The notes under the pieces: generated by a model
The model's input: only the letters and a program-made list of their open reading frames with translations
Told to the model about the DNA's origin: nothing
The model's database searches: none
Part shown: in pieces, positions 15,888-50,953 of the stretch
How positions within the stretch are numbered: the stretch's first letter is position 1
Layout: the number at the start of each line of letters is the position of its first letter
Assembly (NCBI GenBank): GCA_002269645.1
Contig: NIVC01000759.1
Span: forward strand, 124,001 to 188,000
Source: Macrostomum lignano
Taxonomy: Eukaryota
Reading direction: 5' to 3'
Length of the DNA: 64,000 nt
Made by a program: the position numbers and the translations under genes

Positions 15888-15900
15888 CAGGGGTGACTCG

Positions 15901-16190: not shown

Positions 16191-16370
16191 TACCCTATGT
16201 GGGTACAGGTGCTCTGTGAACCCGGTGTACCCGGTAGCGCTGTGACCATGCAGTACCCAGAAACGCTGCAAGCCTGCTCAGATTCTCTTCAAAAAAAGAG
16301 CGGACTTGCAAAGAATTTCTCTCGCAAGAAGCAGCAAATCCCCCACCCCAGAAACAGCTGCCGCTCAGCC

Positions 16371-23103: not shown

Positions 23104-23295
23104 ATTCATTCCTAAAACCAAGCTGAAACAAAAGACCAAGCGTTACTGACAGCTCTCTAGCCTACTAATTTCACCACCTGCCACATCTGCTTCAAGGATT
23201 TCTCCTCATTACTTCGACCCATTTGATTTATGACTTTGCAGTGAATCTCATTCTTATTTGATTCTGCGTGCAGGATTGCTGATCTGGCACGCCCA

Positions 23296-29300: not shown

Positions 29301-32300
29301 TCGGCCGGCACCGGACTCGGTCTTGTCAAATGTCAGACAGATGGATCGAATGTCACCCAGATGCGCTTTAGTCGTCATCAGGAAGTTGTCAACACCTCCG
29401 CTTTCAAAGTTCTGTAAGGTTCGAATTGTAACTAATCTGAAAATCAGTTTACCTTGAATCAAAAAATTCGGAAAGTAAAAAAACAAGAAGCTGACCCGTC
29501 TCTCTCCGTCATCCAGAGTTCTCAGTAGCTCGCTCGCATTCAGGCCTTTAACTGAGATGAAGACTCCAACAGGGACTTCATAGCCTCTTTTCGACCCGTT
29601 GAACACCTCAATTTTGTAGACGAAGCCCTTCTGCTCCCGCTCGTCTTTCAGGGGCAAAAATTGAAACTGAAATGAAAGACGACTCACAGTAAGTCAACTG
29701 GTTTACAAGACATAAAACACGACTCATCAGAGCTGGGCTGACTGCTCACCTTCTGTGCGTCCCGCAGGTCCATTCGTCTCAGTAACACTGCCAGAGGAAT
29801 GAACAGAACCCACAGAACGATCACAACAGACAGCACTGCCCTGCTTTCGCTCAGCTTGCCCTGCCAGTTTTCGAACAGCTCGCCGAAGTCGATCGTGTTG
29901 GGCACGAATGAGATTCCAGCTCCGATGCTGCCGAATAGGTTCACCTTGAAAGCCGGCATCGCCACCGCCGTCTGCTCGCTTGCCTGAAAGTTAGAGTGAT
30001 CGATTTGCAAATCAGACTCGAATTCTAGCTCTAAAATTGTGATCTCGACTGTCACTTAAGTCGTCTTACCTGGCACTTGGAGCTATCCAACAGGCGCCAC
30101 TTGTCGACCCCGCTGTCCCATGCGTAGCACTGTTGAGTGGAGATTCCCAGATGATACAGCAAGGTGCAGTTGCTGCAAGTCAGTGAGCCAGACGAGTCCC
30201 TTGAGCAGCCGAGCTTCCTCACTCCTACGAACACCGTTTGGTTAATTGAGAACATATCAGCTGGAATGAAAATCAGCTCCTTTGTTGCGGTGTCATTGTC
30301 GAGTTGAGTGACTGCGGCACTACTCGGTGGAGAGTGTAGTTAAGAGGATCTGGCGCGGTGCCTTCGTGCAGGAAAACTTCGAGCTGATGTCCAGCATCGG
30401 GTTGGATGACGAGCTGGACGACCTCTCCTGTTGCATTGAAGCTGTGATACATCATGAGCCACTTGTCAGTGGGAGTCTTAGCCACTCTGAGCAGCGGTAC
30501 CTGAGCTCCGGCCAGCTGCATCTCATAGGTCGGAGAAGAGGAAGCTGACCGCCTTGATCGCCCACGGGATGGTGGAAAGTCGTAAAAGCTGCATCCTTGC
30601 GATCGTCCACGAAGGAAAGACGTTGTGACTTTGGACTCCGACTGGCTCCAGTGGTACGGATCGGCTGCGCTCATCATGAATGTGATGTTGCATTTGCCGG
30701 ACGGATCTGCCGCGCTGAACCTGGGCAGTGAGACGCTTCCAATATCAGTTCGGATTTTCGCACCTGTAACATTCCCATTAGTTGTGTCCTGTGAGACGCC
30801 TGCAAGTACGAATCCGGGTCGAATTTGAGTGAACTGATCGACCAACTTCAACTGAAGAAGTGCGATGGTGTCGATACAGTTCAGAGTTTTTATCATGATT
30901 CGCTTTACGGAGTCGCGATCGGTGTAGTTATCGGCATAGAAGACTGATGCATTCCAGATACTGAGGCCAGCATCAATTAGTTGGTCTGGAATGTCTTCTT
31001 TTTCTTGTGGCGAGAGATTATTTATCTTTTCGAAGGCTTCATCGCTGAGTTTTGACAAAATCTCAGCGGCGATCTCCTAAAATAAGAAAGATTTTCGTTT
31101 TTGTATTGTAGCTCGTATTTAACAAATCATTTGACTTCATAGATATTTTGAGTGTCTTTGCTGTCGTCTCTTTTGCAATTAATAGAAAATGTTTGCAGAC
31201 AACCATTGGCGTCTGCAAAATGGATTTTGACTTAAAAACACAATATAGTCATCAGCTTAATCCCCATACGCAAAAAAATTGTGAACCGCGAAAAGGGACT
31301 AGTTATTCGAGGTAAGGTATAATGAAATGAGAATTTTCGCTTGCTTTTCGAGCCATGTTAATCTTGCTTCTTCATATTGCTTCTGATCATCAAAGTCATC
31401 ATTTTGTTTGAGCCAGACTGATTGCGGTAGTCAAAAAGCTAAATTGGTTGCAGATCAATAAAATTCGACATGCAGATTTGCCAAGTTCAACTGTAGAATA
31501 CGAAAAAGAATACCTTTGGGCATCGCATTCTTGTTGGGTTCTCAAAAACGCCTCTTTCACTGCTAAGGTGAGATGGAATACTATTGTATCGATATTTGGA
31601 CGAACCAAGTGACTTCATCCTTAACTGAACCGTTTAACCATTTAAAAAGCTTCAGTTTATCCAAACATGCTTTTTTAGATGGTGTTTGACTGAATTTAAT
31701 ACCAAGTGTAGCTATTTTTCGGTTAACTATTGATGCATCGTTTGCATGTGTCCAAAGGGCCTCAAATTTTTGGAATATAAGAGCTTCGCTGAAAACAAAC
31801 GAGAAATGTCTGTCTTACCTGACCAGCAATGTCCAGCTGCGAAGGAATTTTCACTCCATGCATCAGCAAGCCGGATGTGATCCCGAGTCCAGAAGTTGTA
31901 TTTAAAAAAACAGGGATGAAGCTAAGAAACTTCCAACGGAGCTGAAATTATTAATTTGCTACCTATCTTGAACAGGTTTTTATATCAGGATAATGTAAAT
32001 CGATAATAAAAAATCTTAAGTTTGATCAGCTCTAAAATTGATTATCAAGCTCAGCTTAAAGGTAATTATTTTTATTGTTTTTTTGTTATCCCATGTTATC
32101 CTGTTTAACTCCTGGAATACCTGAACTTTGATTTCTGCTGGTGACCGTAAAACAGTTTTACCTCTGAAATCTTCGCAAGAAAACTTCCTTCAACGTCCTC
32201 TTCGTAAGAATCTAGCAGCAATGCAACTGATTGCATGGCAACTAAAGCCGCCTCGAGGTCGCCAACTGAGATATGCTTTGCTACAATTGAACTGTTGCCA

Positions 32301-35300
32301 CTCAATAGGTTTTCCAACATTGCTGTCAGCTCGCTTGTTGACAGAGCCAGTTTATGGATCTAAGGATTGCATTAGTGCGGTAAATTTCTTTTTATAGTCA
32401 GTCAGAAAAGAGGGAACTCAAATGTAAGAATAATATATTTACATACTTACCGAGAAGGTAAAATTGTAGTATTGCTGCGCTCCAAATGAATCTGAAACTA
32501 CGAATTGAACAACAGCCCAGCTACTGTCACCCAGCGGCAGCATCACTCTTGGACTAACAGCATTCGTCGAGCTGAATAAACTGTAGCGCTTGCCAGATTG
32601 CGGTAAAATTAGCATTGATTCGTAAAGTAGGGGAGCCACCGCTGCGCCGAACTCCGTCCAATTTTTGCATAGCAGCTGCACATTTGTCTTTCTGGAAATT
32701 ACTGAAGAAATTCATTGATTTTTTATTAGCTCTGTTTCATTTACTGAAAAAAAGGAAAAAAATTAAAACTTTTCGAATGTCCCCTTATACCTCCAGGAGG
32801 ATCCACGCGACAGGTACCACCTACTGGAGGCCCATTCACGGTTATGTTGGCAACAAGGTTTGAAATCTCTTGACCCAGATTCCACAGCTGTCCCATCACT
32901 CTGTAGTAGGAGCTCTCCATCAGTGTGCCAGCCGAAATCGAGAGCTCCTGGCCATCGCTGCTTGACTGGCGAGTTCCCTCGATCTCGTATCCGCTGACAC
33001 CGAGCCGAACAATCGTCAAGTTGCTGCTCACGGTAAAGAACTTGTGGCCACAGTTCTGCTCGCACACAAGTCTGTAGACAAGCGGCCTCTTGGCGACAAC
33101 TTTGGCTCCGCAGTTCTGCTCGCAATCAAGTCGGCCTACAGGCTTCGGCTGTGACTCAACAAACACAGTCTTTGATTGCCAAACCTCTCTGGTGTCTTTT
33201 GTAAGACGGACTCGGAACACATAGCTTGCGTTCGGAACAAGATCGAACGAGTTCACAGTGAGGGATCCCGCAATGGATGCGTTTCCCAAGTACACGACAC
33301 CGGGTCCGTTACCGAAGCAGCCTCTCAGTTCCGAGAGCGCTCTGGCTTCAGTCTGCGATGGGATGCTGATGGTGTTGGCTGAGTCTGACTCTTCAGGTCT
33401 GAAGCAGCTCCACTGAAACGTCATGCCGCTAAGATCTCCATCTTCCACGTCAAAGTCCGTGGCCGTCGCAGACGCATTTAGCACGAAGGTCTGATTGAAT
33501 GAAACATATTCCGGACCAGTAATAGCTTCTAGACTCAATGGAGTCTTTGAGACGTTCAGCAATATCCACGCAGTCTCTGCCATAGCAGCATCCACAGTCA
33601 GCTCGGCAGTGAATGAGACATTGTACAGCCCGTATGGCAACACCCGACGCTGAACCAAGCACTGATCGGAGTTGTCAGTGCACAGAGGAAGTTCGATAGA
33701 TGATTGTACAGCAATGATGGTCCAGTATGTGCTGATGTTGGTCAGCTTGGAGCAGTTGTATGGCGCCACGGCAGTAAGGTTAACCTGCTCGGACCTTCTC
33801 TTTGTCAGCACTGATGTCACTTGCAATGGAGATGCGTCCAAGTCAAACAGTCTCAGCCTTGGCTTGTAGCAAGGGATGTCAATCACGGTTGCGAATGTTT
33901 GCGCCGAGTCATTGCTCACGTTGTTAAAAGCGAAAACAAAAACGGGTATCACGCCAACAACAGGGAAAACGCGTTTCCATTTGATCTGTAGGTCGTTTTG
34001 AGTAATTATTGTGTAAGTCGCGTTATTTCTTGTTGCGATCGACCGACACGATTCTGATACACCAAATATCTCGTTCGGATTTTCTGAAGCATTGTAGTAT
34101 ACTTCAATGCATGTTTCATAAGCCACTCTAGTCATGTCAAGCATGAATTCGGTCGGCATTCCGATCCAAACCGTTCGGTTTGTGCTGAGGTTGGCTATTC
34201 TTACAGAATCAAGCAGTAAATTAAGGGAAAAGTTTGCTGTTACTCCATTGACACAGACAGGACTTCTGCACCACATGCTTACAAGTTGTATTCCGATTGC
34301 CTCAGCTGGGTACTGGAAAGAGACCGATATATTAGAGCTACCAGTCAAACTCTGAGCAAAAATTCGTTTGGAGCCAAATATAGAAAATTGAAAATCACAT
34401 AAAACAAGTCCTGCTTCCATCGATGGTAAATTGTTAAGAACAAACTGGACCATTTCGTAGGGCCAAAGAACGCTTTGTCTGTAGGTGACGGATACGTTGA
34501 TCAGTGGATTCAAAACAACGATTGGGTTGATCTGAGCTGTTTTCCAACTCACTGGGTTCGAGGCGTTGACTATAACAGTGTAGTTTCCTGCAGTTGAGTA
34601 CGAGTGCGCCAGCACAATCTCATTGCTCGAGGCGTACTTGCTCGGGTGAAAGGTAACACTGTTTGGGGTGGAGTCACCAAATCTTGTTGTCAATTCGACT
34701 GAAGTTCCATTGGACACTCGTATGGTAATACTCAAGTTTTGACCAGGCTGGACAAACACGTGACTGGCATTGGCTGTAAGTCCTGACACTGGCTCATTGC
34801 ACACCACTGTTGAGTTTTTGGCGTACTGACTCACTAGATTCCAGCAGCGAACTGACAGAGTCATTTCCTCAGCGATGAGGTTCGGAGGACACTCAAGAGT
34901 CACAGTTTCGGTGGATTTTGATGCTGAAACGTTTTGGAACTGATTCAGTAGACTGAACTCTGGTCCTGCAGCAAGGTTAACTTTGCAGCTCACATTTGTA
35001 GGTACTGCTCCGGTGTGGGTCACCGGAAAGTAAATGGTCGGCGTTGCGGCATGAAAATATGCCGACTGAGCCACTGCAGCGATAGGATTCTGCACAATAA
35101 TTCCTGATACAGTTGAGCTCTCGTTGTTCATTGGGCTAGAAGCCAGAACGTGAATGTCATAAACTCCAGGTGCATTGAATGTGTGGGTGATGTTAATGGG
35201 CTGTGCATAGGACACAGGCTCAGGATGCACAATCACTTGGCTTGTACCATCAGTCATTTTCACCGTGTAGGTGACATCAGTACCATTTTGAACAGTGAGC

Positions 35301-38300
35301 TGCAGTGGAAACTGCTCACTTGTGAGCAATACAGATTTATTGATTTTGATTTCAACGCCCTCGATTTCAAATGGTGTGTAGAGCCGAAGCTCAAAGTTTT
35401 TCGAGTACGCACCACCTGTGTTCGTGCAGCGAACATTTGATGTAACAACCGATTTTCCAGGTTCATAAATGTAAGAAATGCTTGGTGGTTCGTCATAATA
35501 AATAAAAAAATTGGAGTACGTCTCTTTTCTGTTCGAATAGAGTGTAACTGTGCATGTGACTTTGAGAAACGATCCTGGCTTCTCATTTACGAAACCAAAA
35601 AAGAAAGTCACATTGTTTGGAGCTGGTAAACGTTCGTAATACGCTTCAACTTTAAGTGCCGCTGCTGGTGCAGGACTGACAAGAAAAGTTCCATTCGCAT
35701 TGAACTCACTAATATTACTTCGGCAGTAAACATTGTAGCTGAATTCCCGATATTGGCCGGAATATAGATAGGTGATACTTATATTTTGTCCTCTGAAGCT
35801 GTCCAAAGAACCATTTTTCCTCCAATTCCAAGTAGTATTTATGCTCTCTTCAAGTGAAATGTCGCAATCAACGTATGTTCCATATTTCCAACTAATCAGA
35901 AATGTGTAGCTCTTGTCTGGTAACACAACCAACTCATTTGTTATTGTTTGGTTAATGATAGGGAGACCTGAAAGATACATAGGATAAATATTTAACTTGA
36001 ACAGAGCTACGATAACAACAACTGTACATAAATGTACGAGTATATCTTAAGTTTGTGTTGGATCCTTTTATTCTTACCTTCACGAATAAATGGTTTCGGA
36101 GCGTCGATACACCTTCTGTTGTTAGCCAAATTTTCATCAATAAAGCTTGGTGACACCCAGTTGATCATGTCTGCACAAATCGTCATGTTCCGGTGGGTAC
36201 TATTAATGCACTGGTCAAATTTAAGTATAAAAGCAACAGTGCACTGCATCGTCATTGTAGCACCAGATTGTAGACCCAGTTGAGTGTCCTTATCAGCGCA
36301 CTTTGCACTCTCCATTATCGAAATAACTGTGCCTAGGTCATCTGTGAAGTGCAGTGTAACATATGGCGAAAAGTTGATACTCGAAGAAACGACTGGATCG
36401 ATCCTCGAGCCGCCGGAATTTCGAACCAAAAACTCGATTGTCTCGTTGTGCCGGTATTCTGGGATCCAGGGATTAAATTTTAGGCCCGGAATCACCGTCA
36501 TTGCATCCAGGGAAATATCCGAAACTAAAATAATTGCAAAGTAACAGCGCTCGTAGAATTTTTATTATTTATTCCAAGCTGCATTTGTTTAAGGAATGTA
36601 AAAGCGAAAAAAGAATAAACTTACAGATATCACAGTAAGTTGCAACTGACTGACAAGCAATGTTATTGCTGAGGTATACCTCGGTGTAAGTTGAATTCAC
36701 AGAATTCCTAAACAAGATGCACAAGTGTGTTGTCGTGTTGCATTGGGTCTGATTAACTTCGAATTGAGGAGACTGAACGCTGAAAGAGAAATTGTCCCCC
36801 TGCGAGTAATGCGCCTTGAAAATTGCTTCGTTTGTGACCAGCAGGGGAATTTTCAAAACAGAGTCGTCAAGGCACCTCTGTATTAAGACATCATCTGTCC
36901 CAAAGCTCGTGCAGTCGCTCGTGACAAAGTGCAACGTCACGTTGAAGTTGACGTCGCTCGATAATTCCAGAATGGGGAAGCTAGCATTGTTGACGCGAAC
37001 TGTTAGGTTGTAGGCAACAACCACATTCTTGTGCCTTTCAATTGGGTTCGGAGTCAAACTCGTCAAATTAGCTTTTAGCAGCTCCGTGTCACATTCTGGC
37101 TGACAGGTTTTATAGCCATCGATATCCAAACAGAGTGCATTGTTGTTTGGGTTCATATCACGGACTGTTTCGTTCTCTGTAGCCAATAATCCTATGCATA
37201 GATAAGATGAAGACCAACACTGACCTCCCTTTGGTGTAACAAAGTCAGTAGAGATGTCAAACTCAAACTCTTCGTACAGTTTGTGACCAGCATGTAGGTC
37301 CCCTTGAATTAGCGTCACAGGGTTGTGCTTGAAGTAAAAGATCGGGTCAGCGGGAGGATAGACCGCTGACGATTTGTTGAGAAAGTACGTGAAGAAGTTT
37401 GCCAAAACTTTAGGCGGAGAGGAAGCTGGAATATCGGCATTTCCACGGAAATGCTTCATTCTTACGGTAGCTACATAGCGACTTGACATGCCTCTTATCG
37501 GATCTATTTCAAACGTAGCGTTTATAAAGATGACGCTCATGTCGATTGTAATATTGCAGACGGATAAACTCTGATCTGGTAGATTAGCACAGCTGCACTG
37601 TGGTGTGAGTAAATCTCCTCTTGGAACGCACGCTGTTCGGTTCTCACTAGAGCAATCAAAATCCGTAGTGCAGGGGTCACCTACATTACCAGGCTCGATG
37701 TCTGAAGTGGTGGAAAAGGACACAAAATGGCTCGTTCTAATACGTCAAACAAAATTGAAAAACTAATTTTTCTTCTTTTTAAAGGCGTAAAACTAGGAAA
37801 AGAAATTACCATCTAGGATCATCTTCGGCGCAAACAGCCGCATTCGAACCGACACACCGCTGTCGGCAGGCAGGTCTGGCATCCATCGAGGAGCTCCGTT
37901 CGAATCTGCTGCCAGCTTGATCAGATTTTTGCCATCGCACTGACTTTGCCACCACGGTGAGAGCGGCTGGGCACAAGACAGGTTTGAGAACAGGCCGAAC
38001 TGAGCGTTGTTCAGCTCAACAAAGGTGTACTCGTCCAGAGTTCCCGTCCGGCAGTCTTTCGCGTGCATCGGGTAGCCGCCCGCTCGAGACCCGACCCACC
38101 ACTCTTTGCACTCGACATACTTGCCGAGTCCCTGCGAGTTCGTGGCCTCCAGCCTCAGTGCCAGCGGCCACTGACTTGCAAAGTATGTCGGCAGCAGCTC
38201 GAGGAAGTCGAGTCCGGTCCAGAAGCTCATCTGGTCAGCTTGCGTGAAGTTGAAGTCCATGGCGGGTCGGTCCAGAGCGAATCCAGTGCGGTAGTCGACT

Positions 38301-41300
38301 GGGGCGCGTCCGGTCTCCAGGTTCGGGGACAATTTTTGGTACACGACCAGGGAGTTTCGGAAGCAGGGCAGGGTGGCGGATCCGAGGTAGGGGTGCTCGA
38401 ACGTCACTGATTGTGATTCGTTGCACAGAATGTCGGTCATGCCTGAAATAGAGTTTTTTAGCTCGTACTGAATGCAGTTCTAGACTGGGTATTTAGCTCG
38501 AATGTATTCATTCTCGTCTGTATAGTGACATACTCTTAATTGGCACAGATGACGCATAGACGTCCAGCTTAATTCCGATTTCAGCGGAAGAATTTCTGCT
38601 AACGCGTAGCTTGTCGGTGTAGGCCACATTTACAATCGGGTAGTTGACAGGCACCAAAACTGAGTGGCTTGGGAGACGAAACGGACCCTGAAGTGAAGCA
38701 TTGTAAAGCCTGTATGGATCTCATTTTGCTATAGACTGGTTAAAGGGAGTGAAAATTTTTTATCATCAATACTTATCATTCATTTATTATGATTCGTACC
38801 TCCAATAGCCTTGAAAGATGAGCAAATTGTACAAAAGTAGCAGTGCAAACCGTGGGACGCAAGGAAAACTTAATTTTTATGCTTCTTAGTGTGTGGGCAG
38901 GGCTCCCAACTTCCTAGAAAAGTTCAATTAAAGTCAAATATATTTAGTAAGCTACTATAGCTAAGACTTGTTAGATTTGCTTTCCGGTTGCTTTTGAGTG
39001 CACCTGCAGACCAGAGCGCCATCCTACAGGCGAGAGCCTGATAGCAAGTACAGCAGAGATGTTGCCGTTTCGCTGATCCTGAGCATGCACGCGGGTACGT
39101 GAGTAAATGCGATCCAGCCATTTCCATAAAGTCGATGGTCGATGGTCGATGTTCGTTACTGGTCTTTTTAGAAGCTGAATGTTTAAAATGGTGTTATTTT
39201 ACTTGGCTTCGCAGTGACCTTAGCCTCTGCTAAGCTCAATGATAATACGAGTATAATGATATTTGATTACACCTGCCTCAATGGGCAGATGTGAAATCGA
39301 CAGCTCAGCCGAAGCTATTGCGTGGGGCATCTGAAGGCTGCGTACGGCTGTTCAGTCCAATGTCTTGGGGTCGCTACACACACCCTCAATTACCCCAGCT
39401 AATGCTGGCACCCATTTTACAGCTGGGTGAACTGAAGCAATGCAGAGTTTAGTGTCTGGCTCAAGGACACAAATTGTACCGAGAGGGTCGAGAATCGAAC
39501 CCCCGACCTTTCCGCCGTGAGTCCGACGCTCTAACCACTAGGCTACAACCGTGCTGATTTTGGGGAAGTATGCCATTCTGCCCAGTAGTGTGATTATCAC
39601 TAAAATTCAGCAACCAATACCGTCTTGGCTCGTACTTATAATTTTCTAGTTTTGTAGGCTCGAATAGTTTGACTGGCAAATAATTACTCTCTTTGAGCAC
39701 AGTCAATAAATGTGGGTTGTCTGACATTTTACAAGATGCAAGTCCAAAATTGGGGAAGACAGACAGCAGGGTACATAGATAACCATTTAAATATACTTTT
39801 CCATTCCTAATTATATATGCTTAGAAATAAGACATAAGGGCATCAATACTACAATATTTAGTTATCGAACTGCCTGAGTTTCCGTATCAGGGGAGTATTT
39901 CGTGAAATATCTCACCGGCTCTCCAAGGCCCAGGTCGTTAGAAGTTCGATCCCATTGTCCCGTGTTGTAGTTATAAAACTCAAATAGTAAGTCTGTCATG
40001 CTGGTATTTTTGTCACTGAGAATCCGTATATTGAGGAGCAGATACTTTGCCGCGAACTGCATCTGCCAGTGCATAAATTTATAGAAGCAAATTTCTAAAC
40101 AAATGCCCTGTAATACTGCTCAGCAAATAAGTCATTATTGTATTTCTGAGACAGCTTACAGTCACGGAAGTTCCTTTCCAATATCCTGAGCCTGAAAGGG
40201 GCAGGCCCGCAGCAGAAATCTTTGATGGCACGAGCTCCGTGGCTGTGAAAGTCCTCAGTGCCTCGTTCGGGTCTATAAATAGAGAAGCGGGAGTTTTCGC
40301 ATTGTGCGCCGTGTTTCCGTACGCATGCGACTGGTGAACAGCATAAACAGCTAATAAGCTGAAATCTGTACATCAAGATGGCAGATAAATTTAATACTTT
40401 CTAACCCAGCTCTATTGATAAAAATGCATAGCATAGCAAATCTTGCTAAATTGATCTATTCTCAGCAACAGTCAAAAGTTCCGCCCTCCAAGCGAGATGA
40501 ATTTTTCTCACGTATTGCGAGTGACGCAACTTACGGCACTCGCGAAGCTTATTGTCACTTGTAGCGCAGCCACACCGAGCAGGCACCGTTAGTCAATTGA
40601 AAGAACAGCTACAGCTGCGCACTCTGCGCTGGCCTCCCCGGTCCCCAGACATGAATCCCATCGAGCATGTCTGCGACTTCCTAAAACGCAGCATTCGAAA
40701 AGAAAATCCACCACAGAATATTGCGGAGCTGCGTCATGCCATTGAAAACGATTGGCAGCAGCAGCTTCCCCAGGACTTTCTGTGACGCCTCATCCTGGGG
40801 ATTTCACCCTCTCTTGGAGGGTGAAACTTTTCACTGTTGCTGAGTATTATCACCGGAGCCTTTCACTAGACGCCTATATTACTCACGTCGGCAGTGTACC
40901 AAGACACCCGTGAAGCTGCCAGCAGTAGCTGTCCTGAACGAGTAAAAAGTCCGTAAGTTCTTCCTCAGCAAGTTGTACGATTGGTCGGCCTGTTGAAATA
41001 CGTAGCTACATCCAGCAACTGCGGAGCCTTCAGAACAGCTGCTGGCCGCATCAAACAGGTTGTTGATAGCGGAGAGCTGGCCTACAGAATCAGTGCTGTG
41101 TGTTGCGTAGGACTTATCCAGCACGGGCGAGAAATACGGCTCGTCACAGGTCCTGTTGCGTCGTCGAGCTACGGACGGAGAGGCGAGCATCTAAGCTTAG
41201 TACCTGATACTTATCTGGCTGATAGAATGCGAAATTACATTTTTATAAGCTTTGGAAGCAGTCAAAAATGTAATACTCTATCACCTGGCGTCACTTCACA

Positions 41301-44300
41301 AATTGTGTGAGCGAGATTGGCTGGATTATCACTGGTCACCCAGCTTAGGTTGCTGAGTGCAGCCGTTGCGAGCACATCCTGAGTGCTTAGCTTCCCTTTA
41401 GGCCAGAGGCTCCAAGTCAGTGTCGAGAAGTCGCTCTCACGAACCCATCCACTTCCTGTGTTCGCAAGTCCGAGGTGAAAAACGAAGTCGTTGTTGAGGG
41501 ACCCGCTGTACTGGAGAGCTGCCATAATGGCAATATCGTTGTCCTCGAAGGAATGCGGCAGGAAAATGCGGCCTCTGTCAGCCCAGCGGATGCCGTGGCA
41601 AAGTTCTTGACTGAGGGTCCGGTGCCTTGGCGGCTCCTTGCTGGCGAAATAGCACATGCCGTTGAAGTATACTGAGGACTGGGGGCATTCTGAGTGAGAA
41701 GTGTGAAGGCGGAATTTTCATTAGTGCAGACTGCACACCCAGGTTCAAATTTAGCCCAGTGATGCAAACGGCCTTTGCCACTTTTAAATTTAGTTCAACA
41801 ATCACGCGTTTTCCTATCCAACTCTGCTGAATGATCTTGGGACCGGTCTGCTCCGGTGTGAGTTGGCTATGATTTTCTGCTAATCCATGGGCGGAGTTCC
41901 TGATGGGACCTGCGGAGTCGCAGCTTTTCACGAGCAAGGGTTCTAGGTTCTTTGCTCACCGCTAGTACGAGTAGAGGTGAATCTAAGTTGTAGGTGGGCC
42001 CACAGCAAATGTCTTTTGAAGTGGCATTAGGCCTTCATAACATTTTCATAAATTTACATTTTTACTAGTACTACAAAGGGTTGCTAATTGTCCGCCGAAA
42101 TGGCAATGACTGACAAGCAACTGGCAAGCTACAAAGTGACTTTCTCAAGTACATTTTTGGCTTTTAACTTAATTTTAGACCAAATTTATTAGAGATCTTG
42201 AGCAACGAAAATCTGAAGCACTTTTTGTAGCTTTTCACTATTCAACATGTAGCTTGTCACTGTTCAAACTTGCAACTTGTCACTATTCAACATGTAGCTT
42301 GTCACTGTTCAAACTTGCAACTTGTCACTATTCAACATGTAGCTTGTCACTGTTCAAACTTGCAACTTGTCACTATTCAACATGTAGCTTGTCACTGTTC
42401 AAACTTGCAACTTGTCACTATTCAACATGTAGCTTGTCACTATTCAAACTTGCAACTTGTCACTATCAACATGTAGCTTGTCACTATTCAAACTTGCAAC
42501 TTGTCACTATTTAACATGTAGCTTGTCACTATTCAACATGTAGCTTGTCACTGTTCAAACTTGCAACTTGTCACTATTCAACATGTAGCTTGTCACTGTT
42601 CAAACTTGCAACTTGTCACTATTCAACATGTAGCTTGTCACTGTTCAAAATTGCAACTTGTCACTATTCAACATGTAGCTTGTCACTGTTCAATATGTAG
42701 TTTGCCAACTTTTCATCTTGTAGTTTGTCACTGTTCAACCTGTAGCTTGTTACAATTGTCAAGTCTATGCACCGCCCCCAGATGGGCATACATATTTTTC
42801 CACTCCTCTCCACAAAAGAAGCGCCTACGCTGCGCGGAACTTCCATGTGGCAATGGCGAAATAGGGAAGTCATTAGACAATAGGTAGGAAAGGCAGCTTT
42901 TTGCAGTTTCTTCTTTCCAACTTTCTCATACCCAGGCATAAAGTTTCTAAGGAATTTAGCTCGTACAAGGATGGAATCTCCCACCAAAAATTTCTGTTGA
43001 CGTCATCGTACGCTGTTGAGCCAGTGGTGTGCAGAAGCTCCCAAACGGAGCGGGTCTACGGACGCATTCTCATGCGAAAAAGTCATGAAAACTCCGGCTT
43101 CGGTAAAGAAATACTTTGAAGCGGGGTGAAACACTTCAATGCTTTTGAATTTTTTACTTGAACGGCCCCCGATGCAAGAAGCTTTGTCTAATCTGAGGCT
43201 GGCTGCAGCTGCATAAAAATGCAGAGGTGTCCCCCCAATAGCTTCTGTAACAATGAAGAGCGAAGAAAATTTTCTCGCTGAATTTAGCCTTAACCAGGAA
43301 GAAATTTTTCTGTACGGGGTCTAAATAATACATTTCTGAAATTTTAAACTGGATTAGTCGACATGCGGTAGCATCAGCTAATTGAAGCATTAATTGAAGC
43401 ACATTTACTTAACAACTCTTGTGTATGTAGCCGGGTTCTACACGCCAAACCGCGTCTTGTCAGTTTATTATCGTTTGGTGGCAGTGTGAACGATCGAACT
43501 AGTGTGATAATCGCGGCGCCGCTCTAAAGGCCATGTAGACCAATCCCTGAATCCCCGATTCGCATGACTACCTTTTCAACTTCGAGTATGTGTCCTAAAA
43601 CAGGATAGCTAGACCTGTCTGTGACTTTCCAGATATTAAAAGCTGACTGCCTTTCCTAAGATTTCTGCGATAATGCCTCGATCCTGCGCGTTCTGAGGCA
43701 CCAGCTGGGGTAAGATGATAAGACCCTGATCGTCTTGAATGATAAATTAAAATTTTCTTATTATTATTGCTCAATGCTGCTGACGTTGAATCTGCGAAGA
43801 TTGGTTGAGGGCCACAGAATACTTTCCCAAATTATGCTCTGTTTACAATTAAGCTGCTCTACACACCAGAGGCTACCCAGAGGTAAAAAATGTGGTAGCA
43901 ATTATTTACATTGCGACATTCTTCACTTACTTAGTAAAGTAGATTTCCCCACTCTTCTCTCCCTCCCGTTGCCGTACTCGACGCATTTCGCTGGCGTTTT
44001 TTTACCGTAACATCTCATTGTTTGGCTCCAACTAATTTTTGCTGCAGACCATCAATTGGGTAAGGAGTTTACTTGAGTATCTTAAAGGAATTATTTGGCG
44101 CTTAAATTGTAATTTATTACATATGTTGTGGGCTGCGCCTCGCAATGGCCTTGCCCCGACCTCTGCGCTCTCCGCCCCTCATCTCCCTGCCACTGGTTTT
44201 TTCTGGCTTGCCCCCTCCGTCTAAAGCTGCTATTCACTTTTTGTTCTCATTTTCATCAGCCCACATTTTCATTGGCTGGCTTATTTTCATCTCTCTCTCT

Positions 44301-47148
44301 CGCGTGGGCTACTCCAATCATGTGTCTCGCCGCGGAGGCACCTGATTGGCTAGCCTTCCCTCTCGCCCTTCAACTCTGTGAGTTTTGCCCCCACCCCCAG
44401 CCCTGCGTGGCTAAGCCCACCCCAGTCCCCTGCTCAGTGCTCACCCAGTATTTATGTGCACGCGCGGCCTTCGCACGGCCCTCGCCCTCCCTGCTCTCTC
44501 TCTACAACTCTAGCTCTACGCGTGTTTGAGTGAAAGTGAAGCTTGAAATTGAAATACAGTCAACTGAGGCTGAGATATTAGAGGCCACGCCTGCCTGCAT
44601 GAGTGCGACAAGTTGACCCCGCCCGGTAAGACAGCATTCGCTTTCGTTAATTTGTCCCGTCTTCATTATTCACCTACCTCGCCACCGTCTTCCTTCGGGT
44701 CTGCGAAGTGTCTGTACGCCTCCAGACCCGTGCTCACCTCTGCTGTGGCTGCTGAGTGGCTACCTGCTCACAGCCTCCTCATCCGCATATCTCTCTCTCC
44801 GTGGGGCTGGCCGAGTGTCTGTACGCTCCCAGCCTCTCCACCTCCACCTCGAAGTATCCGTACGCCTCGGGGGTCGCCACTTTCTCGCCTATCCCACCCG
44901 GCAAGCTCTGGGCAGTCCAGTACCCGAACCCCTGATCACCCCGTCTGCGGTCCGCACGGACGGAAGCAGAAAATACAACACATATGAGAAGACGGGTGCC
45001 CTTAAGTTCTATATAAACTCGTAAAAAGAATTTTTCTAATAAAATAAAGAAAACGCGATTTTGAAATAATTTTAAGCGCATCTACGAGTATGCGTGTCAC
45101 AGTGTGTTTGGGGTGACGTCGGCATTGCGGGTTGGGGGGTTGTTGCTTGGCAACTAGCGTTTAAAACCCCAACTTGTGCTCTGTCAGCGGTGTTGCTCAC
45201 CTACTCAATTTTTTCAAGTTGTATTCTCGTAGTACTCTTTGTGTTTTTCGTAAATGTTAAACCACCTAATGACAACTACGTCATTCGTCGTACAAGGCGT
45301 GCGCCCCTGCTCGTTTCTTTGTGCTCCTTCACGTTCTGCTGTTTCTGTCTTCGTCACTTCGCCTAACTCCAAAGCAATGTTTTTAAAAACATCATTCTAA
45401 TATGCATTTTCGGTGCATCTTTGAAAAGCTATATTTTAGTAAAAGGGGCTGTAGCAGCAGTATGTCTCACCGTCTGCCAGACAGCCGAAAAAAGTGAATT
45501 CCACAGCCTCGCAAGTTTTGATGTCAAATCTGACTCGAGCTTTCCAAGCATTGACCGTGGAATTCAGGCTGAGCATAGCAACTGTTGAATCCATCGGAGC
45601 CGTTACGTTCTGACAATGGTTATCAATATGGCAGCTTGCATCAGTGACATATATTTACATAGCCAGTTCATTTTTGGCAAAAAATGAAATTTTTTTGGAA
45701 CTCCTAAATCGACAGAGCATGTGTCGAGAACTCACGAATAAGTAACCGGCACTTTCACCGTTCTTGCTGAGAAATGTCACTTCAACCACCTGGCTGTCTG
45801 TGCAGTTGATTCCGCCAACTGACACATTGGTCACGTGATAAAGGTCCATAAAGTCGACATCCTGACCGGCTGTTGTCTTCACTGTAAAGGTCGCACCTTC
45901 CACAAGCAGGTTAGGATTGGCGAGCTGATAAACTTCGATTGGTGGACACTCTGCAATGGATAGGTTTGGCATTTGCGTACTTATGCCAGGGTCAGTACAT
46001 ATTTTTACCTCAAGGGCCAGATTTGGAACCTCAGCATGACTGCGGGCCGGAGGGGAGAGAAGAGACGGAATAAACAAGGCAGAAAGGAGAAAGGAGAGAA
46101 AGGAGGAGGCGAGGGAATAAAGAAGAGAGAAGCAAAGAGAAGTAAGGAGAGGAGAGGAGAGGAGATAAGAGAAGAGAGAAGAGAGGAGATTAGAGAGGAG
46201 ATTGAGAGAAGAGTGCTGAGAAGAAATATAATTCTTGAGGAGGCTGAACTGCTACTGTAAGTTTCAACGGACCCGAGGGCCGGATAGAGAGGCTTTGCGG
46301 GCCGCATGTGTCCCGCGGGCCGGAGTTTGCCGACACCTAATTATACCGAGTTTACTCAAAGGAAAATGTTGCTCCTTTCCATTCAGTTTTGTCAAATGTG
46401 CAATAAAATTCATAAAAGACTAAAGAAATTAAAAAGGCATTTGAGTATTTATGATGAGTTTTTGCCTCAGAGGAAACTTTGAGAGGCACTTACCGATCGG
46501 CAGACCGATGAACTCAATCTTCAGCGACTTGTTTCCAACAAAATCAAGTGGCGTGAGCTTCAAGACCCTGGCCCGAATGTTGCCCAGCGACAGGTGGTAG
46601 GTTTGGTCGAGCATGTCGCTGCTATTGATGCCCGGGAGCACGGCGGGCGCACTGCTGCCCAGCGGGTAGCTCCTCAGTGCCGAGTTGAGCGACTCGCCGA
46701 ACTCTAGTTGAAATGTTCTGACGTAGATTTCTGGCGAATCCTGCGCAATCACGTAGCCCGAGATTTCGTTGACGATGTCAAAGATGAACAGCAGGTAGTT
46801 GGATGTTGAGTAACCGTTGCTGTACGGCAGGTTGCTTAGAAGTGACCTGTTCAAGTACCAGTTGAGCTTCACTGCCACAGGCGGGAACTCGGGGTAGGCA
46901 GAATTCATGGCCCTGACTTGGTGGGGACCATAGGACACCAGCGGAGGAGCACCTAAAAATGAGTTACACCAACCAAATATGAAGTGCAGAAAATGGAAAG
47001 GTATAATAAAGTTTGTGTGCCGAAAAATCTTTTTCTTTTAGACTAGAACATTAGAAGGAATTAATTTTCTCTCACTCATATCGGACCCGGCTGCAGAGCT
47101 CTCCTCAAGCAGCAGCAGCCATAGAAGAAATGCCAATCCAGTGGCCAT
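26378..47148 (-). CDS. PKD1L: Polycystin-1-like (PKD1L/REJ-type, 11-TM) gene, copy 1. Resolved exons: 47148-47076, 46952-46494, 45950-45736, 45609-45471, [unresolved], 41689-41285, 41168-40887, ~40337-40160, ~40090-39880, ~38710-38535, 38442-37810, 37701-36625, 36524-36078, 35967-32791, 32701-32451, 32359-32162, 31941-31819, 31076-30070, 29983-29750, 29666-29496, 29411-29011, 28886-28324, 28252-28029, 27929-26549, 26460-26378
   Basis: Signal-like N-terminus, PKD-type repeats (AHSYSTAGNYTVIVNASNPVS), REJ (GGTCRVDPP), PLAT (YKIEVFNG...LGDIRSI...WYVSRLIVTD...EDWL), polycystin motif (WIDNYTRAVLLECSLFYPDTNFF) and TM6 channel block. Junction phases are compatible where checked. One 1-nt frameshift at ~30298. 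Confidence 0.85.
26549..27929 (-). CDS. Copy 1 TOP/polycystin cation-channel exon
   Basis: TRAVLLECSLFY; pore region QLSVMLGKFN; S6 IVLNIFVVLLNESY. Confidence 0.92.
32791..35967 (-). CDS. Copy 1 giant exon (3177 nt): PKD-like Ig repeats and REJ domain
   Basis: Open 1058-codon frame bounded by AG/GT; HTFNAPGVYDIHVLASS and HSYSTAGNYTVIVNASN; FNQTFVLNASAT..DFD..FQWSC. Confidence 0.85.
37810..38442 (-). CDS. Copy 1 exon encoding a divergent fibrinogen-related (FReD) domain
   Basis: VVYQK...DYRTGF...FWTGLDFLELL...LRLEATN...YVE...WWQSQC..NL...RW...VRMRLFAP follows the order of fibrinogen C-terminal motifs. Confidence 0.6.
39240..39554 (-). mobile_element. tRNA-derived SINE in a polycystin intron
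   Basis: A box TAGCCTAGTGGTTAGAGCG and B box GGTTCGATTC, followed by body GTGTCCTTGAG...CACCCAGCTGTAAAATGGGT typical of conserved-central-domain SINEs; ATT-rich tail. Confidence 0.75.
40459..40846 (+). mobile_element. Internally deleted Tc1/mariner element
   Basis: WPPRSPDMNPIEHV transposase motif (ORF 40552-40785); ~45-bp imperfect TIRs CTCAGCAACAGTCAAAAGTT... and ...AACTTTTCACTGTTGCTGAG with TA at the ends. Confidence 0.85.
41285..41689 (-). CDS. Copy 1 exon encoding a C-type-lectin-like domain
   Basis: CPQSSVYFNGMCYF...SQELC...GRIFLPHSFEDND...FHLGL...W...W..G...ICE; phase-1 AG/GT borders. Confidence 0.65.
42241..42700. repeat. 45 bp minisatellite made of two related 22/23 bp subunits (TTCAACATGTAGCTTGTCACTG + TTCAAACTTGCAACTTGTCACTA)
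   Basis: Read directly; ORFs repeat every 15 aa. Confidence 0.93.
44124..44980. mobile_element. Solo LTR, 857 bp
   Basis: Inverted termini TGTTGT...ACAACA; 4-bp TSD CATA at 44120-44123 and 44981-44984; no internal coding region. Confidence 0.75.
45987..46339. mobile_element. Degenerate hAT/Charlie-like MITE with an internal GA-rich tract
   Basis: Ends CAGGGTCAG...AAGGGCCAGAT...GCGGGCCG and GCGGGCCGCATG...CCCGCGGGCCGGAGTTTGCCGACACC resemble MER58/MER45-type termini; no clean TSD. Confidence 0.55.
46494..46952 (-). CDS. Copy 1 exon 2: F5/8 type C (discoidin)-like domain
   Basis: YVRTFQLEFG and IRARVLKLTPLDFVGNKSLKIEFIG resemble the discoidin C-terminal strands (IxARYIRIxPxxW...LRxELYG). Confidence 0.6.
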
Positions 47149-47559
47149 GCAGTTCCTGCTGGCCTTCATATGCCGGTTCTGCAGTTTTTTCGAATAGCTT
47201 AGAGACTGTCTTTCTGTTAAAATTACCTGAGCGACTGGATTTGCTATTCCCACAGTCGACGGATAGAGTCGACATTTGTATCGTCCGGAGCATGACATTG
47301 TTATTCTGGTAACTCAGCAACAGCCAACCGTAGTGAGTAAGGAGAACCGGGGGCGTTCCTTGGACCCCCATTGGACAGACTCTAGCTACTCTGAGTCTAC
47401 CTCATAGCCTGTTCTGTGATCCTCATAACACCATGCATGAAAAACTTAAGGAAATGTTGCATGCGACCTTTTAGTTCCAATGCGTTGCCATGGATTTTAT
47501 TGAGGGGGGGGGGGTAAAATCCAACAATTTTATTACTAAAATTTCTCCAATATTTGAGG

Positions 47560-50500: not shown

Positions 50501-50953
50501 CTTCTTGCAATGGTGTGGGCAATGAAGCACTTCCGAAACTACCCGTGGGAGATGGTGCAGGTGGACATTAAGGGGCCCCTGCCTACGACCGAGGCTGGCC
50601 TCAAGCACATCATCTGCTTCACGGATGTGTTTTCAAAGTGGGTCAAGGCGACGGCAGTGACAAACATCGAAGCCCGCACGGTGGCTGAGGCAATGCTGCG
50701 TAGTGTGATTCTTCGCCATGGGTCGCCTGGAATCATCCATTCCAATCAAGGTCGTCAATTCGAAAGCGAGGTCTTCAAAGAACTGTGCAAGCGGCTCGAT
50801 ATTCGCAAGACAAGGACGACCCCGTTTCATCCAAGCGGCAACCCAGTGGTCGAGCGGTTTAACAGAACATTGGGCGACATGCTGGCGGCCTACTGCATGG
50901 AACAGCACGACAAGTGGGCGGACTTCCTGCCGTATGTCATCTGGGCGATATGA
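47560..50953 (+). mobile_element. Decayed Ty3/Gypsy LTR retrotransposon: 5' LTR, PBS, gag, protease, RT, partial RNase H and integrase core; 3' end missing
   Basis: LTR 47560-47711 (TGTAAA...TTTACA); PBS TGGTGGCAGCGGT at 47713-47725; two CCHC knuckles (CFNCAQPGHFAAQC, CSRCSGRGHRAEVC); FDTGA; SPWASN, YMDD; VAYASRVL; [26 protein letters not shown]. Several frameshifts and stops. Confidence 0.92.

What the first reader, a model, noticed from the sequence alone, without database searches (positions are those of the whole stretch)
36625..47148. Polycystin-1-like channel subunit carrying a lectin/pattern-recognition cassette (discoidin + C-type lectin + fibrinogen domain)
Seen: phase-compatible exons lead from a signal-like N-terminus through discoidin-like exons (46952-46494, 45950-45471, ~38710-38535), a CTL exon (41689-41285) and a FReD exon (38442-37810) into PKD/REJ/GAIN/PLAT/11-TM exons. 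Known: PKD1-family ectodomains carry CTL, WSC, LRR or SUEL domains, while FReD, CTL and F5/8C domains are typical invertebrate glycan and microbe recognition modules. I do not recall FReD or discoidin domains in polycystins. Inference: a family of ligand-gated sensor channels whose outer domains recognise glycans (prey, mate, microbes or substrate).
Basis: partly seen in the sequence, partly recalled or inferred. Interest (0 to 1): 0.78.

Follow-up and report, generated by a model that had tools for sequence, protein, structure and literature searches.

The report
Flatworm polycystin-1-like gene with lectin-fold ectodomain
A Macrostomum lignano (flatworm) gene encodes a roughly 3,950-residue polycystin-1-like channel subunit whose outer part carries very diverged copies of three lectin-type folds (discoidin-like, C-type-lectin-like, fibrinogen-related), a domain mix I did not find reported for polycystins; the usual sugar- and calcium-binding motifs are missing.

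Summary
The window is Macrostomum lignano DNA: UniProt models match it at 96-100%.

**Gene model.** On the minus strand, 23 exons (47169 to 26547) join into one 3,951-codon reading frame. Every junction is GT-AG and there is no stop codon. The order is signal peptide, ten N-terminal exons, PKD repeats, REJ, TM1, PLAT, polycystin domain, PKD channel, with about 11 TM segments.

**Domain calls.** Pfam and PDB sequence searches find nothing in the N-terminal exons.
- FReD exon: hhalign 95%, E 4e-8; all four FReD cysteines align.
- CTL exon: 62%, E 7e-5.
- First discoidin-like exon: 53%, E 1.3e-4.

The other two "discoidin" exons match none of the three families. No GPS/GAIN domain is detected. 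The FReD Ca2+ loop and the CTLD EPN/QPD motif are absent.

**Linkage.** Public models join the FReD exon to the polycystin body. The link from exons e1-e4 to the rest is inferred, not shown by a transcript.

**Verdict.** This is a new variant of a known kind. Glycan sensing and ligand gating are untested.

The parts
47076..47169 (-). Exon 1: start codon and signal-peptide-like N-terminus (MKASRNCMATGLAFLLWLLLLEESSAAG...), donor GTGAGA, ends in phase 1
   Evidence: sequence read directly. Signal peptide judged by eye only.
46494..46952 (-). Exon e1 (aa 32-184): discoidin/F5_8C-like beta-sandwich module, without the two flanking cysteines
   Evidence: No Pfam hit. Profile of window + P0001 against PDB: the full-length hit is lactadherin C2, E=0.9. 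hhalign against 6 PDB-validated discoidin domains: 53.5%, E 1.3e-4, 115 columns, score 32.0; best of 60 shuffles 18.7. Specific to this family. 65% identical to P0001.
45471..45950 (-). Exons e2a (45950-45736) and e2b (45609-45471), aa 185-302: Cys-bounded module of unassigned fold, split by a 126-nt intron
   Evidence: In-frame stop if read as one exon. Splice sites. Conserved in P0001/P0002. No discoidin, CTLD or FReD signal.
41285..41689 (-). Exon ctl (aa 303-437): C-type-lectin-like domain (long form: C0-C0' and C1-C4 cysteines, WIGL-like 'FHLGL'); no EPN/QPD, no C2-C3 disulfide
   Evidence: No Pfam hit. Profile against PDB: the only hits are the DC-SIGNR CTLD, E about 4. hhalign against 7 PDB-validated CTLDs: 62%, E 7.4e-5, score 31.6; shuffle maximum 16.8. 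Alignment. Specific.
40887..41168 (-). Exon e4 (aa 438-531): four-Cys module, fold unassigned (PAN/apple-like pattern by eye, not tested)
   Evidence: Conserved at the end of P0001/P0002. Splice sites. Matches none of the three families.
38534..40350 (-). Exons e5 (40350-40160), e6 (40062-39916) and x (38687-38534), aa 532-695: module of unassigned fold. The e6-to-x intron holds a tRNA-SINE-like insertion.
   Evidence: Splice sites and phases. Codon-usage LLR +12.9, +8.7 and +13.6 in frame, negative in the other two frames; 99th percentile of intron windows is 4.8. The x exon is conserved in gene B at 40% aa identity. No discoidin signal.
37810..38442 (-). Exon fred (aa 696-906): very diverged fibrinogen-related domain. 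Both FReD disulfide pairs and the GFG, FWxG and CA..WW..C..NL motifs are kept. The Ca2+ loop (DxDxD) and part of the P subdomain are deleted.
   Evidence: No Pfam or PDB sequence hit. HMM of 18 real FReDs with hmmsearch --max: 16.3 bits, p 2.6e-7; best of 2000 shuffles 7.0. hhalign 95%, E 4e-8, 131 columns. MAFFT with 22 FReDs aligns all 4 Cys. Single-sequence AF2 model (pLDDT 40.7): 46 of the top 50 Foldseek PDB hits are FReDs, best E 0.04. AF2 with family MSA: pLDDT 74-86 for residues 10-134, below 50 for 135-193, TM about 0.6 to FGL1, fibrinogen and ficolin; this test is circular.
36078..37701 (-). Exons n7 (37701-36625) and n8 (36524-36078), aa 907-1414: Cys-rich, N-glycosylation-sequon-rich ectodomain region with no family assignment
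   Evidence: Junctions match UniProt model P0003. No Pfam hit. 41-55% aa identity to gene B, dS saturated, pN 0.27-0.39.
32791..35967 (-). Large exon (aa 1415-2473): PKD repeats and most of the REJ domain
   Evidence: Pfam PKD 5.3e-24, REJ 6.7e-35.
30070..32701 (-). Exons rej2, g1, g2, g3 (aa 2474-2944): end of REJ and a GAIN-position region with a degenerate GPS-like motif (C.AWD..W..C, no HL/T). A 44-nt mini-intron lies at 30323-30280.
   Evidence: REJ C-terminus 4.8e-8, no GPS hit. Junctions.
29011..30028 (-). TM1 exon (30028-29750) and two PLAT exons (29666-29496, 29411-29011)
   Evidence: Pfam PLAT 2.8e-8. TM1 at aa 3009-3027. Junctions.
26547..28886 (-). Exons tmA, tmB and chan (aa 3228-3951): TM2-TM5/6, polycystin (TOP) domain, 6-TM PKD channel. 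The stop codon is at 26546-26544.
   Evidence: Pfam Polycystin_dom 7.6e-34, PKD_channel 3.6e-21, Ion_trans 1.5e-9. Hydropathy.
52206..63778 (-). Gene B: tandem paralogue, with an x-like exon, FReD-like exon, and the body through to the channel. Its 5' part lies beyond the window end. It has a 1-nt frameshift in the FReD exon near 63390.
   Evidence: UniProt models P0004 and P0126 correspond to this paralogue (P0004 is 96% identical to the gene A FReD exon) and join the FReD exon to the body through the channel.

Best explanation
**What it is (shown).** Gene A (47169 to 26547, minus strand, 23 exons, 3,951 aa) is a Macrostomum lignano member of the polycystin-1 (PKD1-like / REJ) family. It has a signal peptide and a mosaic ectodomain of about 3,000 aa, followed by TM1, PLAT, TM2-5, the TOP/polycystin domain and a 6-TM channel.

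**N-terminal modules (remote homology).** The N-terminal third of the ectodomain is built largely from domain-sized exons or exon groups bounded by phase-1 junctions. Its modules, in order:
- a discoidin-like module
- an unassigned module
- a CTLD-like module
- a 4-Cys module
- an unassigned module
- a diverged FReD

These are followed by a Cys-rich region, PKD repeats and REJ.

**How it most likely works (inferred from family knowledge).** As in other PKD1-like proteins, it probably assembles with PKD2-like subunits (1:3) into a sensory cation channel, on cilia of sensory neurons or on sperm. The ectodomain would act as the ligand, adhesion or mechanical sensor. Alternatively it could act as an intrinsic agonist that contacts the TOP domain, as shown for the human PC-1 N-terminus with its CTL domain (PMC7728438).

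**Likely ligands (inferred).** The lectin-fold modules have lost the canonical Ca2+ and sugar-binding motifs. They are therefore more likely to mediate protein or non-canonical ligand contacts than classical lectin binding.
For: **Origin.** P0003 is 99% identical; P0004 is 96%.

**One gene.**
- All 22 introns are GT-AG, the ORF is uninterrupted, and phases are compatible.
- Codon-usage LLR is positive in frame for every N-terminal exon and negative in the other frames.
- The only good signal peptide is in exon 1.
- P0001 and P0002 join e1-e2-ctl-e4 and stop exactly at the e4 splice donor, so they appear to be 3'-truncated models rather than complete proteins, which is compatible with further exons downstream.
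- P0003, P0004 and P0126 join FReD, n7, n8, PKD and REJ; P0004 continues through TM1 and PLAT, and P0126 on to the channel.

**Family.** Pfam finds PKD, REJ, PLAT, Polycystin_dom and PKD_channel. Hydropathy gives about 11 TM segments.

**Modules.**
- The hhalign matrix is cleanly diagonal: scores 57.9, 31.6 and 32.0 on the diagonal, 9-14 off it.
- Old paralogues A and B show pN well below the saturated pS in x, n7 and n8, so these regions are under constraint.

**Mechanism precedents.** PMC7728438; sea-urchin REJ lectin domains in PMC1934368; planarian PKD1L genes in sensory neurons in PMC11448475.
Against: - No transcript evidence for the e4, e5, e6, x junctions. e5 and e6 have no homologue available.
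- Gene B's public model (P0126) shows no e1-e4 equivalents upstream, and P0001/P0002 show no polycystin body. The e1-e4 cassette could therefore be a separate gene.
- The CTLD and discoidin assignments are only 53-62% hhalign probability, against small template alignments.
- Pfam at E<=10 sees none of the three lectin folds.
- The FReD P subdomain is not confidently modelled.
- Function, partner subunit and expression site are entirely inferred.
Confidence: 0.7

Rival explanations
1. Two genes. Exons sig-e1-e2-ctl-e4 (47169-40887) encode a separate secreted lectin-fold protein, of the kind modelled by P0001/P0002. The polycystin gene would begin further downstream, around e5/e6/x.
For: P0001 and P0002 contain only e1-e4. 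The gene B model P0126 has no such cassette upstream of its x-like exon. The e4-to-e5 (536 nt) and e6-to-x (1,228 nt) introns are longer than the gene's typical 90-120 nt. Read-through of the e4 donor hits a stop after two codons.
Against: P0001 and P0002 end exactly at the e4 donor without the read-through residues, so they look like truncated models. e5 carries no start codon or signal peptide, and e6's Met is followed by a poor signal sequence. The phases e4, e5, e6, x, FReD all fit, and codon usage of e5 and e6 is above the 99th percentile of intron windows. There is no AATAAA in the e4-to-e5 intron. A type-I polycystin needs a signal peptide, and the only good one is in exon 1.
Confidence: 0.2
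2. The lectin-fold resemblances are chance or convergent, and the N-terminal exons are lineage-specific domains unrelated to FReD, CTLD or discoidin.
For: No Pfam hit at E<=10. No PDB phmmer hit. phmmer of the FReD exon against 1.84 billion proteins finds only its own M. lignano copies. The CTLD and discoidin hhalign probabilities are only 62% and 53%.
Against: For FReD: p 2.6e-7 against a real-FReD HMM, hhalign 95%, four Cys and six motif positions invariant across 23 sequences, and FReDs dominate Foldseek hits even for the MSA-free model. For CTLD and discoidin: scores are about twice the best shuffle, the alignments are in register over the full domain, only the predicted family appears among 177,635 PDB sequences, and the matrix is diagonal.
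Confidence: 0.05
3. Gene A is a decaying pseudogene copy, so the odd N-terminal exons have no function.
For: Gene B has a frameshift in its FReD exon. There is a possible 1-nt indel or 44-nt mini-intron at 30323-30280 in both copies. TE insertions lie in the introns.
Against: Gene A has 3,951 codons without a stop across 23 exons and all splice sites are intact. Coding-type codon usage holds in every exon. pN is well below pS between the old paralogues. A proven 41-nt intron next door makes the 44-nt intron plausible.
Confidence: 0.05

Closest known systems
Human PKD1 / PKD1L2 / PKD1L3 and sea-urchin REJ proteins (polycystin-1 family)
   Same: PKD repeats, REJ, TM1-PLAT, about 11 TM, TOP/polycystin domain and PKD channel. 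A mosaic N-terminal ectodomain that includes a C-type-lectin-like domain, as in hPKD1, hPKD1L2 and SpREJ1-3 (PMC1934368). The ectodomain can act as an intrinsic agonist in PC-1 (PMC7728438).
   Different: It adds a FReD-like and a discoidin-like module, which the reports I could search do not describe. It has no detected LRR, WSC, SUEL, LDL-A or EGF modules. GPS is not detected and HL/T is absent. The CTLD lacks EPN/QPD.
Planarian PKD1-like genes (Schmidtea pkd1L-1, pkd1L-2; PMC11448475)
   Same: Flatworm PKD1-like proteins with REJ, PLAT, polycystin domain and channel. They are expressed in sensory neurons and give the most plausible physiological setting.
   Different: That paper reports no extra N-terminal modules for the planarian proteins (Pfam-based figure). 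The M. lignano modules are invisible to Pfam too, so the comparison is open.
Fibrinogen-related domain lectins (ficolins, tachylectin 5A, FIBCD1, mollusc FREPs, FGL1, angiopoietins)
   Same: A/B subdomain core, both disulfides, and the GFG, FWLG and CA..WW..C..NL motifs. Foldseek's best matches are FGL1, fibrinogen alphaEC, angiopoietin-2 and M-ficolin.
   Different: 17-28% identity. 'GGW' is deleted. The Ca2+ loop (FSTxDxDxD) is deleted and about 12 residues of the P subdomain are deleted. It sits inside a membrane protein ectodomain, not at the C-terminus of a secreted oligomer.
Discoidin / F5_8 type C domains (FV and FVIII C2, lactadherin C2, DDR1, neuropilin b1, retinoschisin)
   Same: For e1, the alignment is in register over about 115 columns, including the WLQVDL-like, VTG..TQG-like and ARFVRI.P...LR.EL.G-like strands.
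   Different: No N- or C-terminal cysteine within the exon. About 19% identity. Below Pfam detection.

Membership tests
Polycystin-1 (PKD1-like) family | REJ domain in the ectodomain | tested here: met
   Pfam REJ 6.7e-35 plus the C-terminal part at 4.8e-8
Polycystin-1 (PKD1-like) family | GAIN/GPS domain immediately before TM1, with an HL/T cleavage site | tested here: inconclusive
   No Pfam GPS hit. A C.AWD..W..C motif is present at the right position, but the CxC-HLT part reads 'AFKVNLF'. The fold was not tested.
Polycystin-1 (PKD1-like) family | PLAT domain in the first intracellular loop after TM1 | tested here: met
   Pfam PLAT 2.8e-8. TM1 is at aa 3009-3027, followed by the PLAT exons at aa 3038-3227.
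Polycystin-1 (PKD1-like) family | 11 TM segments, the last six forming a TRP-like channel with a TOP/polycystin domain | tested here: met
   Polycystin_dom 7.6e-34, PKD_channel 3.6e-21, Ion_trans 1.5e-9. Ten hydropathy peaks plus a weaker one at aa ~3205-3226; this is a hydropathy scan only.
Polycystin-1 (PKD1-like) family | Assembly with a PKD2-like subunit; channel activity | not testable with these tools
   No partner gene lies in the window. Needs co-expression and electrophysiology.
Fibrinogen-related domain (Pfam Fibrinogen_C, PF00147) | Match to the curated family profile above threshold | tested here: not met
   No Pfam hit even at E<=10. phmmer against PDB and against 1.84e9 proteins finds no FReD.
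Fibrinogen-related domain (Pfam Fibrinogen_C, PF00147) | Homology detectable by unfiltered HMM or profile-profile comparison with real members | tested here: met
   16.3 bits, p 2.6e-7, shuffle maximum 7.0. hhalign 95%, E 4e-8.
Fibrinogen-related domain (Pfam Fibrinogen_C, PF00147) | Two conserved disulfides (A-domain pair; CA....WW...C pair) and the GFG / FWLG motifs | tested here: met
   C6, C26, C156 and C168 align with the four FReD cysteines. G53, F54, W74, G76, C156, A157, W163, W164, C168 and L173 are invariant in the 23-sequence alignment.
Fibrinogen-related domain (Pfam Fibrinogen_C, PF00147) | Ca2+-binding loop (DxDxD) and intact P subdomain that forms the ligand pocket | tested here: not met
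   7-residue deletion of the loop and 12-residue deletion further on. pLDDT is below 50 for residues 135-193 even with the family MSA.
Fibrinogen-related domain (Pfam Fibrinogen_C, PF00147) | FReD three-dimensional fold | tested here: inconclusive
   MSA-free AF2 model has pLDDT 40.7, yet 46 of the top 50 Foldseek hits are FReDs at E 0.04-0.5. The family-MSA model gives TM about 0.6, E 1.6e-8, but that test is circular.
C-type lectin-like domain (Pfam Lectin_C, PF00059) | Profile match | tested here: inconclusive
   Pfam finds none. hhalign against 7 real CTLDs: 62%, E 7.4e-5, score 31.6 against shuffle maximum 16.8. Profile against PDB returns only the DC-SIGNR CTLD, E about 4.
C-type lectin-like domain (Pfam Lectin_C, PF00059) | Cysteine framework (C1-C4, C2-C3; C0-C0' in long form) and WIGL motif | tested here: inconclusive
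   C0, C0', C1, C4 and 'FHLGL' are present. C2 and C3 are both absent.
C-type lectin-like domain (Pfam Lectin_C, PF00059) | Ca2+/carbohydrate site (EPN or QPD, plus WND) | tested here: not met
   The aligned positions read KLS (window) or QSQ (P0001). The WND position reads W.TSDN.
Discoidin / F5_8_type_C (PF00754) | Profile match (exon 46952-46494) | tested here: inconclusive
   Pfam finds none. hhalign 53.5%, E 1.3e-4, score 32.0 against shuffle maximum 18.7. HMM 2.9 bits for the window and 6.3 bits for P0001. Lactadherin C2 at E 0.9 in PDB.
Discoidin / F5_8_type_C (PF00754) | N- and C-terminal cysteines closing the barrel | tested here: not met
   No Cys in the exon. The next Cys is the second residue of the following exon.
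Discoidin / F5_8_type_C (PF00754) | Profile match for exons 45950-45471 and 40350-38534 | tested here: not met
   hhalign scores 13.8 and 9.4, at background level. The PDB search gives unrelated hits.

The most novel reading that the evidence does not exclude
Macrostomum has a lineage-specific set of PKD1-like sensory channels that recruited immune-type recognition folds (discoidin, CTLD, FReD) and stripped them of their Ca2+ and sugar sites. The FReD-like module would then act as a new kind of ligand sensor or tethered agonist, functionally coupled to the channel half. The reason for raising this is the conversion pattern. Gene conversion between the two old paralogues has kept four tracts 97-100% identical: the FReD core, parts of the PKD and REJ regions, and the channel half. 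The other ectodomain exons have diverged to 37-55% aa identity.
Probability: 0.1. Interest if true: 0.7.

Novelty: new variant of a known kind. Interest (0 to 1): 0.45.

Why it matters
Polycystin-1-family proteins are thought to sense their environment through mosaic ectodomains. What those ectodomains bind is a long-standing open question. A flatworm member with FReD-like and discoidin-like modules would widen the known module repertoire, which so far includes LRR, WSC, CTL, SUEL, LDL-A, EGF and PKD.

It also shows that such modules can be so diverged that Pfam-based architecture surveys miss them entirely. M. lignano is a transgenic-capable model, so expression, knock-down and ligand tests are feasible.

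The significance is limited for three reasons. Domain shuffling in metazoan ectodomains is common. The modules lack canonical binding motifs. Nothing functional is known.

Tried and rejected
- **Pfam hmmscan** of every N-terminal open frame, of the spliced 906-aa N-terminus and of P0001/P0002, at E<=1-10: nothing relevant.
- **phmmer against PDB** for the FReD, CTL and e5-e6-x pieces: nothing, or unrelated hits.
- **phmmer of the FReD exon against 1.84e9 representatives:** only M. lignano's own copies, so no deeper natural MSA could be built.
- **Spliced query:** The remaining remote jobs were therefore run on single exons or an alignment headed by one.
- **Single-sequence AF2 of the FReD exon:** pLDDT 40.7, unusable as a model. 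Its Foldseek hit list was still informative.
- **The look-up of encoding contigs for P0001 and P0002:** not on record. I could not inspect paralogue loci to see whether a polycystin body follows their e4.
- **Discoidin reading of e2 and e5-e6-x:** rejected at sequence-profile level.
- **Frameshift near 30300:** I first took the frame change as a frameshift or pseudogene sign. A GT-AG 44-nt intron fits, and a clear 41-nt intron lies 250 nt away. The UniProt model reads it through with one extra base, so an indel remains possible.
- **Literature searches** for FReD or discoidin in polycystins found nothing relevant.
- **Template sequences:** The sequence I labelled MBP-A turned out to be MBP-C.
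Full report
**Origin and layout**

The window is eukaryotic. A search with the translated exons returns Macrostomum lignano UniProt models at 99% (P0003) and 96-100% (P0004 and P0003), so the DNA comes from this free-living flatworm.

The finding lies on the minus strand. Downstream of it, Pfam recognises PKD repeats (5.3e-24), REJ (6.7e-35), PLAT (2.8e-8), Polycystin_dom (7.6e-34) and PKD_channel (3.6e-21). The channel half of the claim is therefore solid.

**Gene model**

- 45950-45471 contains an in-frame stop. It is split by a 126-nt intron into 45950-45736 and 45609-45471, which also fits the paralogue P0001.
- The '~38710' exon starts at 38687, in phase 0. The tandem copy uses the same acceptor.

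Three further exons are required:
- 41168-40887, which is conserved at the end of P0001 and P0002.
- 40350-40160 and 40062-39916.

With these, ten N-terminal exons give a 906-aa ORF. The whole gene is 23 exons, all GT-AG, 11,853 nt, 3,951 codons, with no stop.

A codon-usage log-likelihood was trained on the Pfam- or homology-supported exons against the gene's introns. It is positive in the proposed frame and negative in the other two frames for every untrained N-terminal exon. For e5 and e6, which have no homologue, the scores are +12.9 and +8.7; the 99th percentile of intron windows is 4.8.

Hydropathy gives TM1 before PLAT and about ten further TM segments around the TOP domain. Pfam finds no GPS domain, and the GPS-like motif lacks HL/T.

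**Linkage evidence**

Three UniProt models join the FReD-like exon to downstream parts of the gene:
- P0003, for gene A, continues to n7, n8, PKD and REJ.
- P0004 continues through TM1 and PLAT into the next TM region.
- P0126 continues to the channel.
- P0004 and P0126 correspond to gene B.

P0001 and P0002 are paralogues at 50-65% identity. They join e1, e2, CTL and e4, and they stop exactly at the e4 donor.

Nothing available shows e4 spliced to e5, e6 and x. That step rests on four things: phase, ORF continuity, codon usage, and the fact that the only good signal peptide is in exon 1. I put the one-gene model at about 0.75-0.8. The link from x/FReD to the channel is above 0.95.

**Are the lectin folds real?**

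Standard tools say no:
- No Pfam hit at E<=10.
- No PDB phmmer hit.
- phmmer of the FReD exon against 1.84 billion representatives finds only M. lignano's own copies.

I therefore tested each prediction against real family members.

*FReD.* I fetched real FReDs with a fibrinogen-gamma query.
- An HMM of 18 of them, run with hmmsearch --max, scores the exon at 16.3 bits (p 2.6e-7). The best of 2,000 shuffles is 7.0.
- hhalign gives 95% probability, E 4e-8, over 131 columns.
- A MAFFT alignment with 22 FReDs puts all four FReD cysteines and the GFG, FWxG and CA..WW..C..NL residues in invariant columns.
- The MSA-free AF2 model is poor (pLDDT 40.7). Even so, 46 of its top 50 Foldseek PDB hits are FReD structures.
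- With the family MSA, which makes the test circular, residues 10-134 reach pLDDT 74-86 and TM is about 0.6 to FGL1, fibrinogen and ficolin. The P subdomain stays below 50.
- The Ca2+ loop (DxDxD) and part of the P subdomain are deleted.

*CTLD.*
- A two-sequence profile finds only DC-SIGNR CTLDs in the PDB, at E about 4.
- hhalign against seven PDB-validated CTLDs gives 62%, E 7.4e-5, score 31.6. The shuffle maximum is 16.8.
- The long-form cysteines C0/C0', C1 and C4 and a WIGL-like motif are present. C2/C3 and EPN/QPD are absent.

*Discoidin.*
- For e1, the only full-domain PDB hit is lactadherin C2, E 0.9.
- hhalign against six validated discoidin domains gives 53.5%, E 1.3e-4, score 32.0. 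The shuffle maximum is 18.7.
- The flanking cysteines are missing.
- e2 and e5-e6-x show background scores only.

*Specificity.* A 6x3 hhalign matrix is cleanly diagonal. Scores are 57.9, 31.6 and 32.0 on target and 9-14 everywhere else.

**Paralogy**

A tandem copy, gene B (at least 63778 to 52206), runs off the window end. A and B are old paralogues. Synonymous sites are saturated in x, n7, n8, rej2 and g1, with pN 0.27-0.46. Four tracts are 97-100% identical at the nucleotide level, introns included:
- the FReD core
- about 1 kb of the PKD repeats
- about 1 kb of REJ
- everything from the GAIN end to the stop codon

This is gene conversion. The A/B identity of the FReD core is therefore not independent evidence of constraint on it.

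**Mechanism**

Shown: the domain architecture of a PKD1-like channel subunit with a novel ectodomain mix.

Inferred from family knowledge:
- assembly with PKD2-like subunits into a sensory cation channel;
- an ectodomain acting as sensor or intrinsic agonist (PMC7728438);
- a likely site in ciliated sensory neurons (planarian PKD1L genes, PMC11448475) or in sperm (REJ proteins, PMC1934368).

'Ligand-gated' and 'glycan-recognising' are not supported by sequence, because the canonical binding motifs are gone.

**Novelty and verdict**

The papers I could search list CTL, SUEL, EGF, WSC, LRR and PKD modules in PKD1-family ectodomains. None mentions FReD or discoidin. The public M. lignano models exist but carry no such annotation. 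I could not query InterPro architectures.

It is a new variant of a known kind, of moderate interest.

Noticed in passing
window 26660-30720, 32800-33850, 34450-35500, 37870-38330 (gene A), against 52206-63500 (gene B): The two tandem polycystin paralogues are ancient: dS is saturated in several exons. They share four sharply bounded gene-conversion tracts of 97-100% nt identity, introns included. The tracts alternate with blocks of 50-65% identity.
   Followed up: partly
window ~63384-63393 (gene B FReD exon): A 1-nt deletion (frameshift) relative to gene A and to UniProt model P0004, apparently in a short run of C. It is either an assembly error or a disabling mutation of this copy.
   Followed up: partly
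window 30029-30069 and 30280-30323: Mini-introns of 41 and 44 nt with GT-AG ends. The UniProt model of the paralogue reads the second one through with one extra base, so it may instead be a 1-nt indel shared by both copies.
   Followed up: partly
window 48196-50950 (+): Gypsy-type LTR retrotransposon ORFs (CCHC gag, RT, RNase H, integrase) sit between the two polycystin genes. A LINE-type RT fragment lies at 22103-23161 (-).
   Followed up: partly
window 1-16200: V-ATPase subunit a gene (exons at 1267-1785, 2160-2900, 5945-6391, + strand). Its introns and the downstream flank to ~16.2 kb are packed with long satellite arrays of 15-88-nt units, e.g. 6641-8316, 10221-11603 and 13696-15884.
   Followed up: partly
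window 17430-17978 (-) and 20486-21661 (+): An LRR-repeat coding exon and a FEZ-like (fasciculation and elongation protein zeta) coding exon lie between the V-ATPase gene and the polycystin gene.
   Followed up: partly
window ~39355-39820 and 42227-42757: Intron contents of gene A. One is a tRNA-SINE-like insertion, whose ORF translation carries the widespread 'VVRASDSRRKGRGFDSRP' motif. The other is a 45-nt satellite of about 12 copies.
   Followed up: no
window 40887-41168 (exon e4): A four-cysteine module conserved in P0001 and P0002, with a C..C(x8)C..C spacing reminiscent of PAN/apple domains. Its fold was not tested.
   Followed up: no
window 36078-37701 (exons n7, n8): About 500 aa of Cys-rich, N-glycosylation-sequon-rich ectodomain with no detectable family. 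It begins with an EGF-like Cys cluster. It has diverged fast between the paralogues (41-55% aa identity) but is still under constraint.
   Followed up: partly
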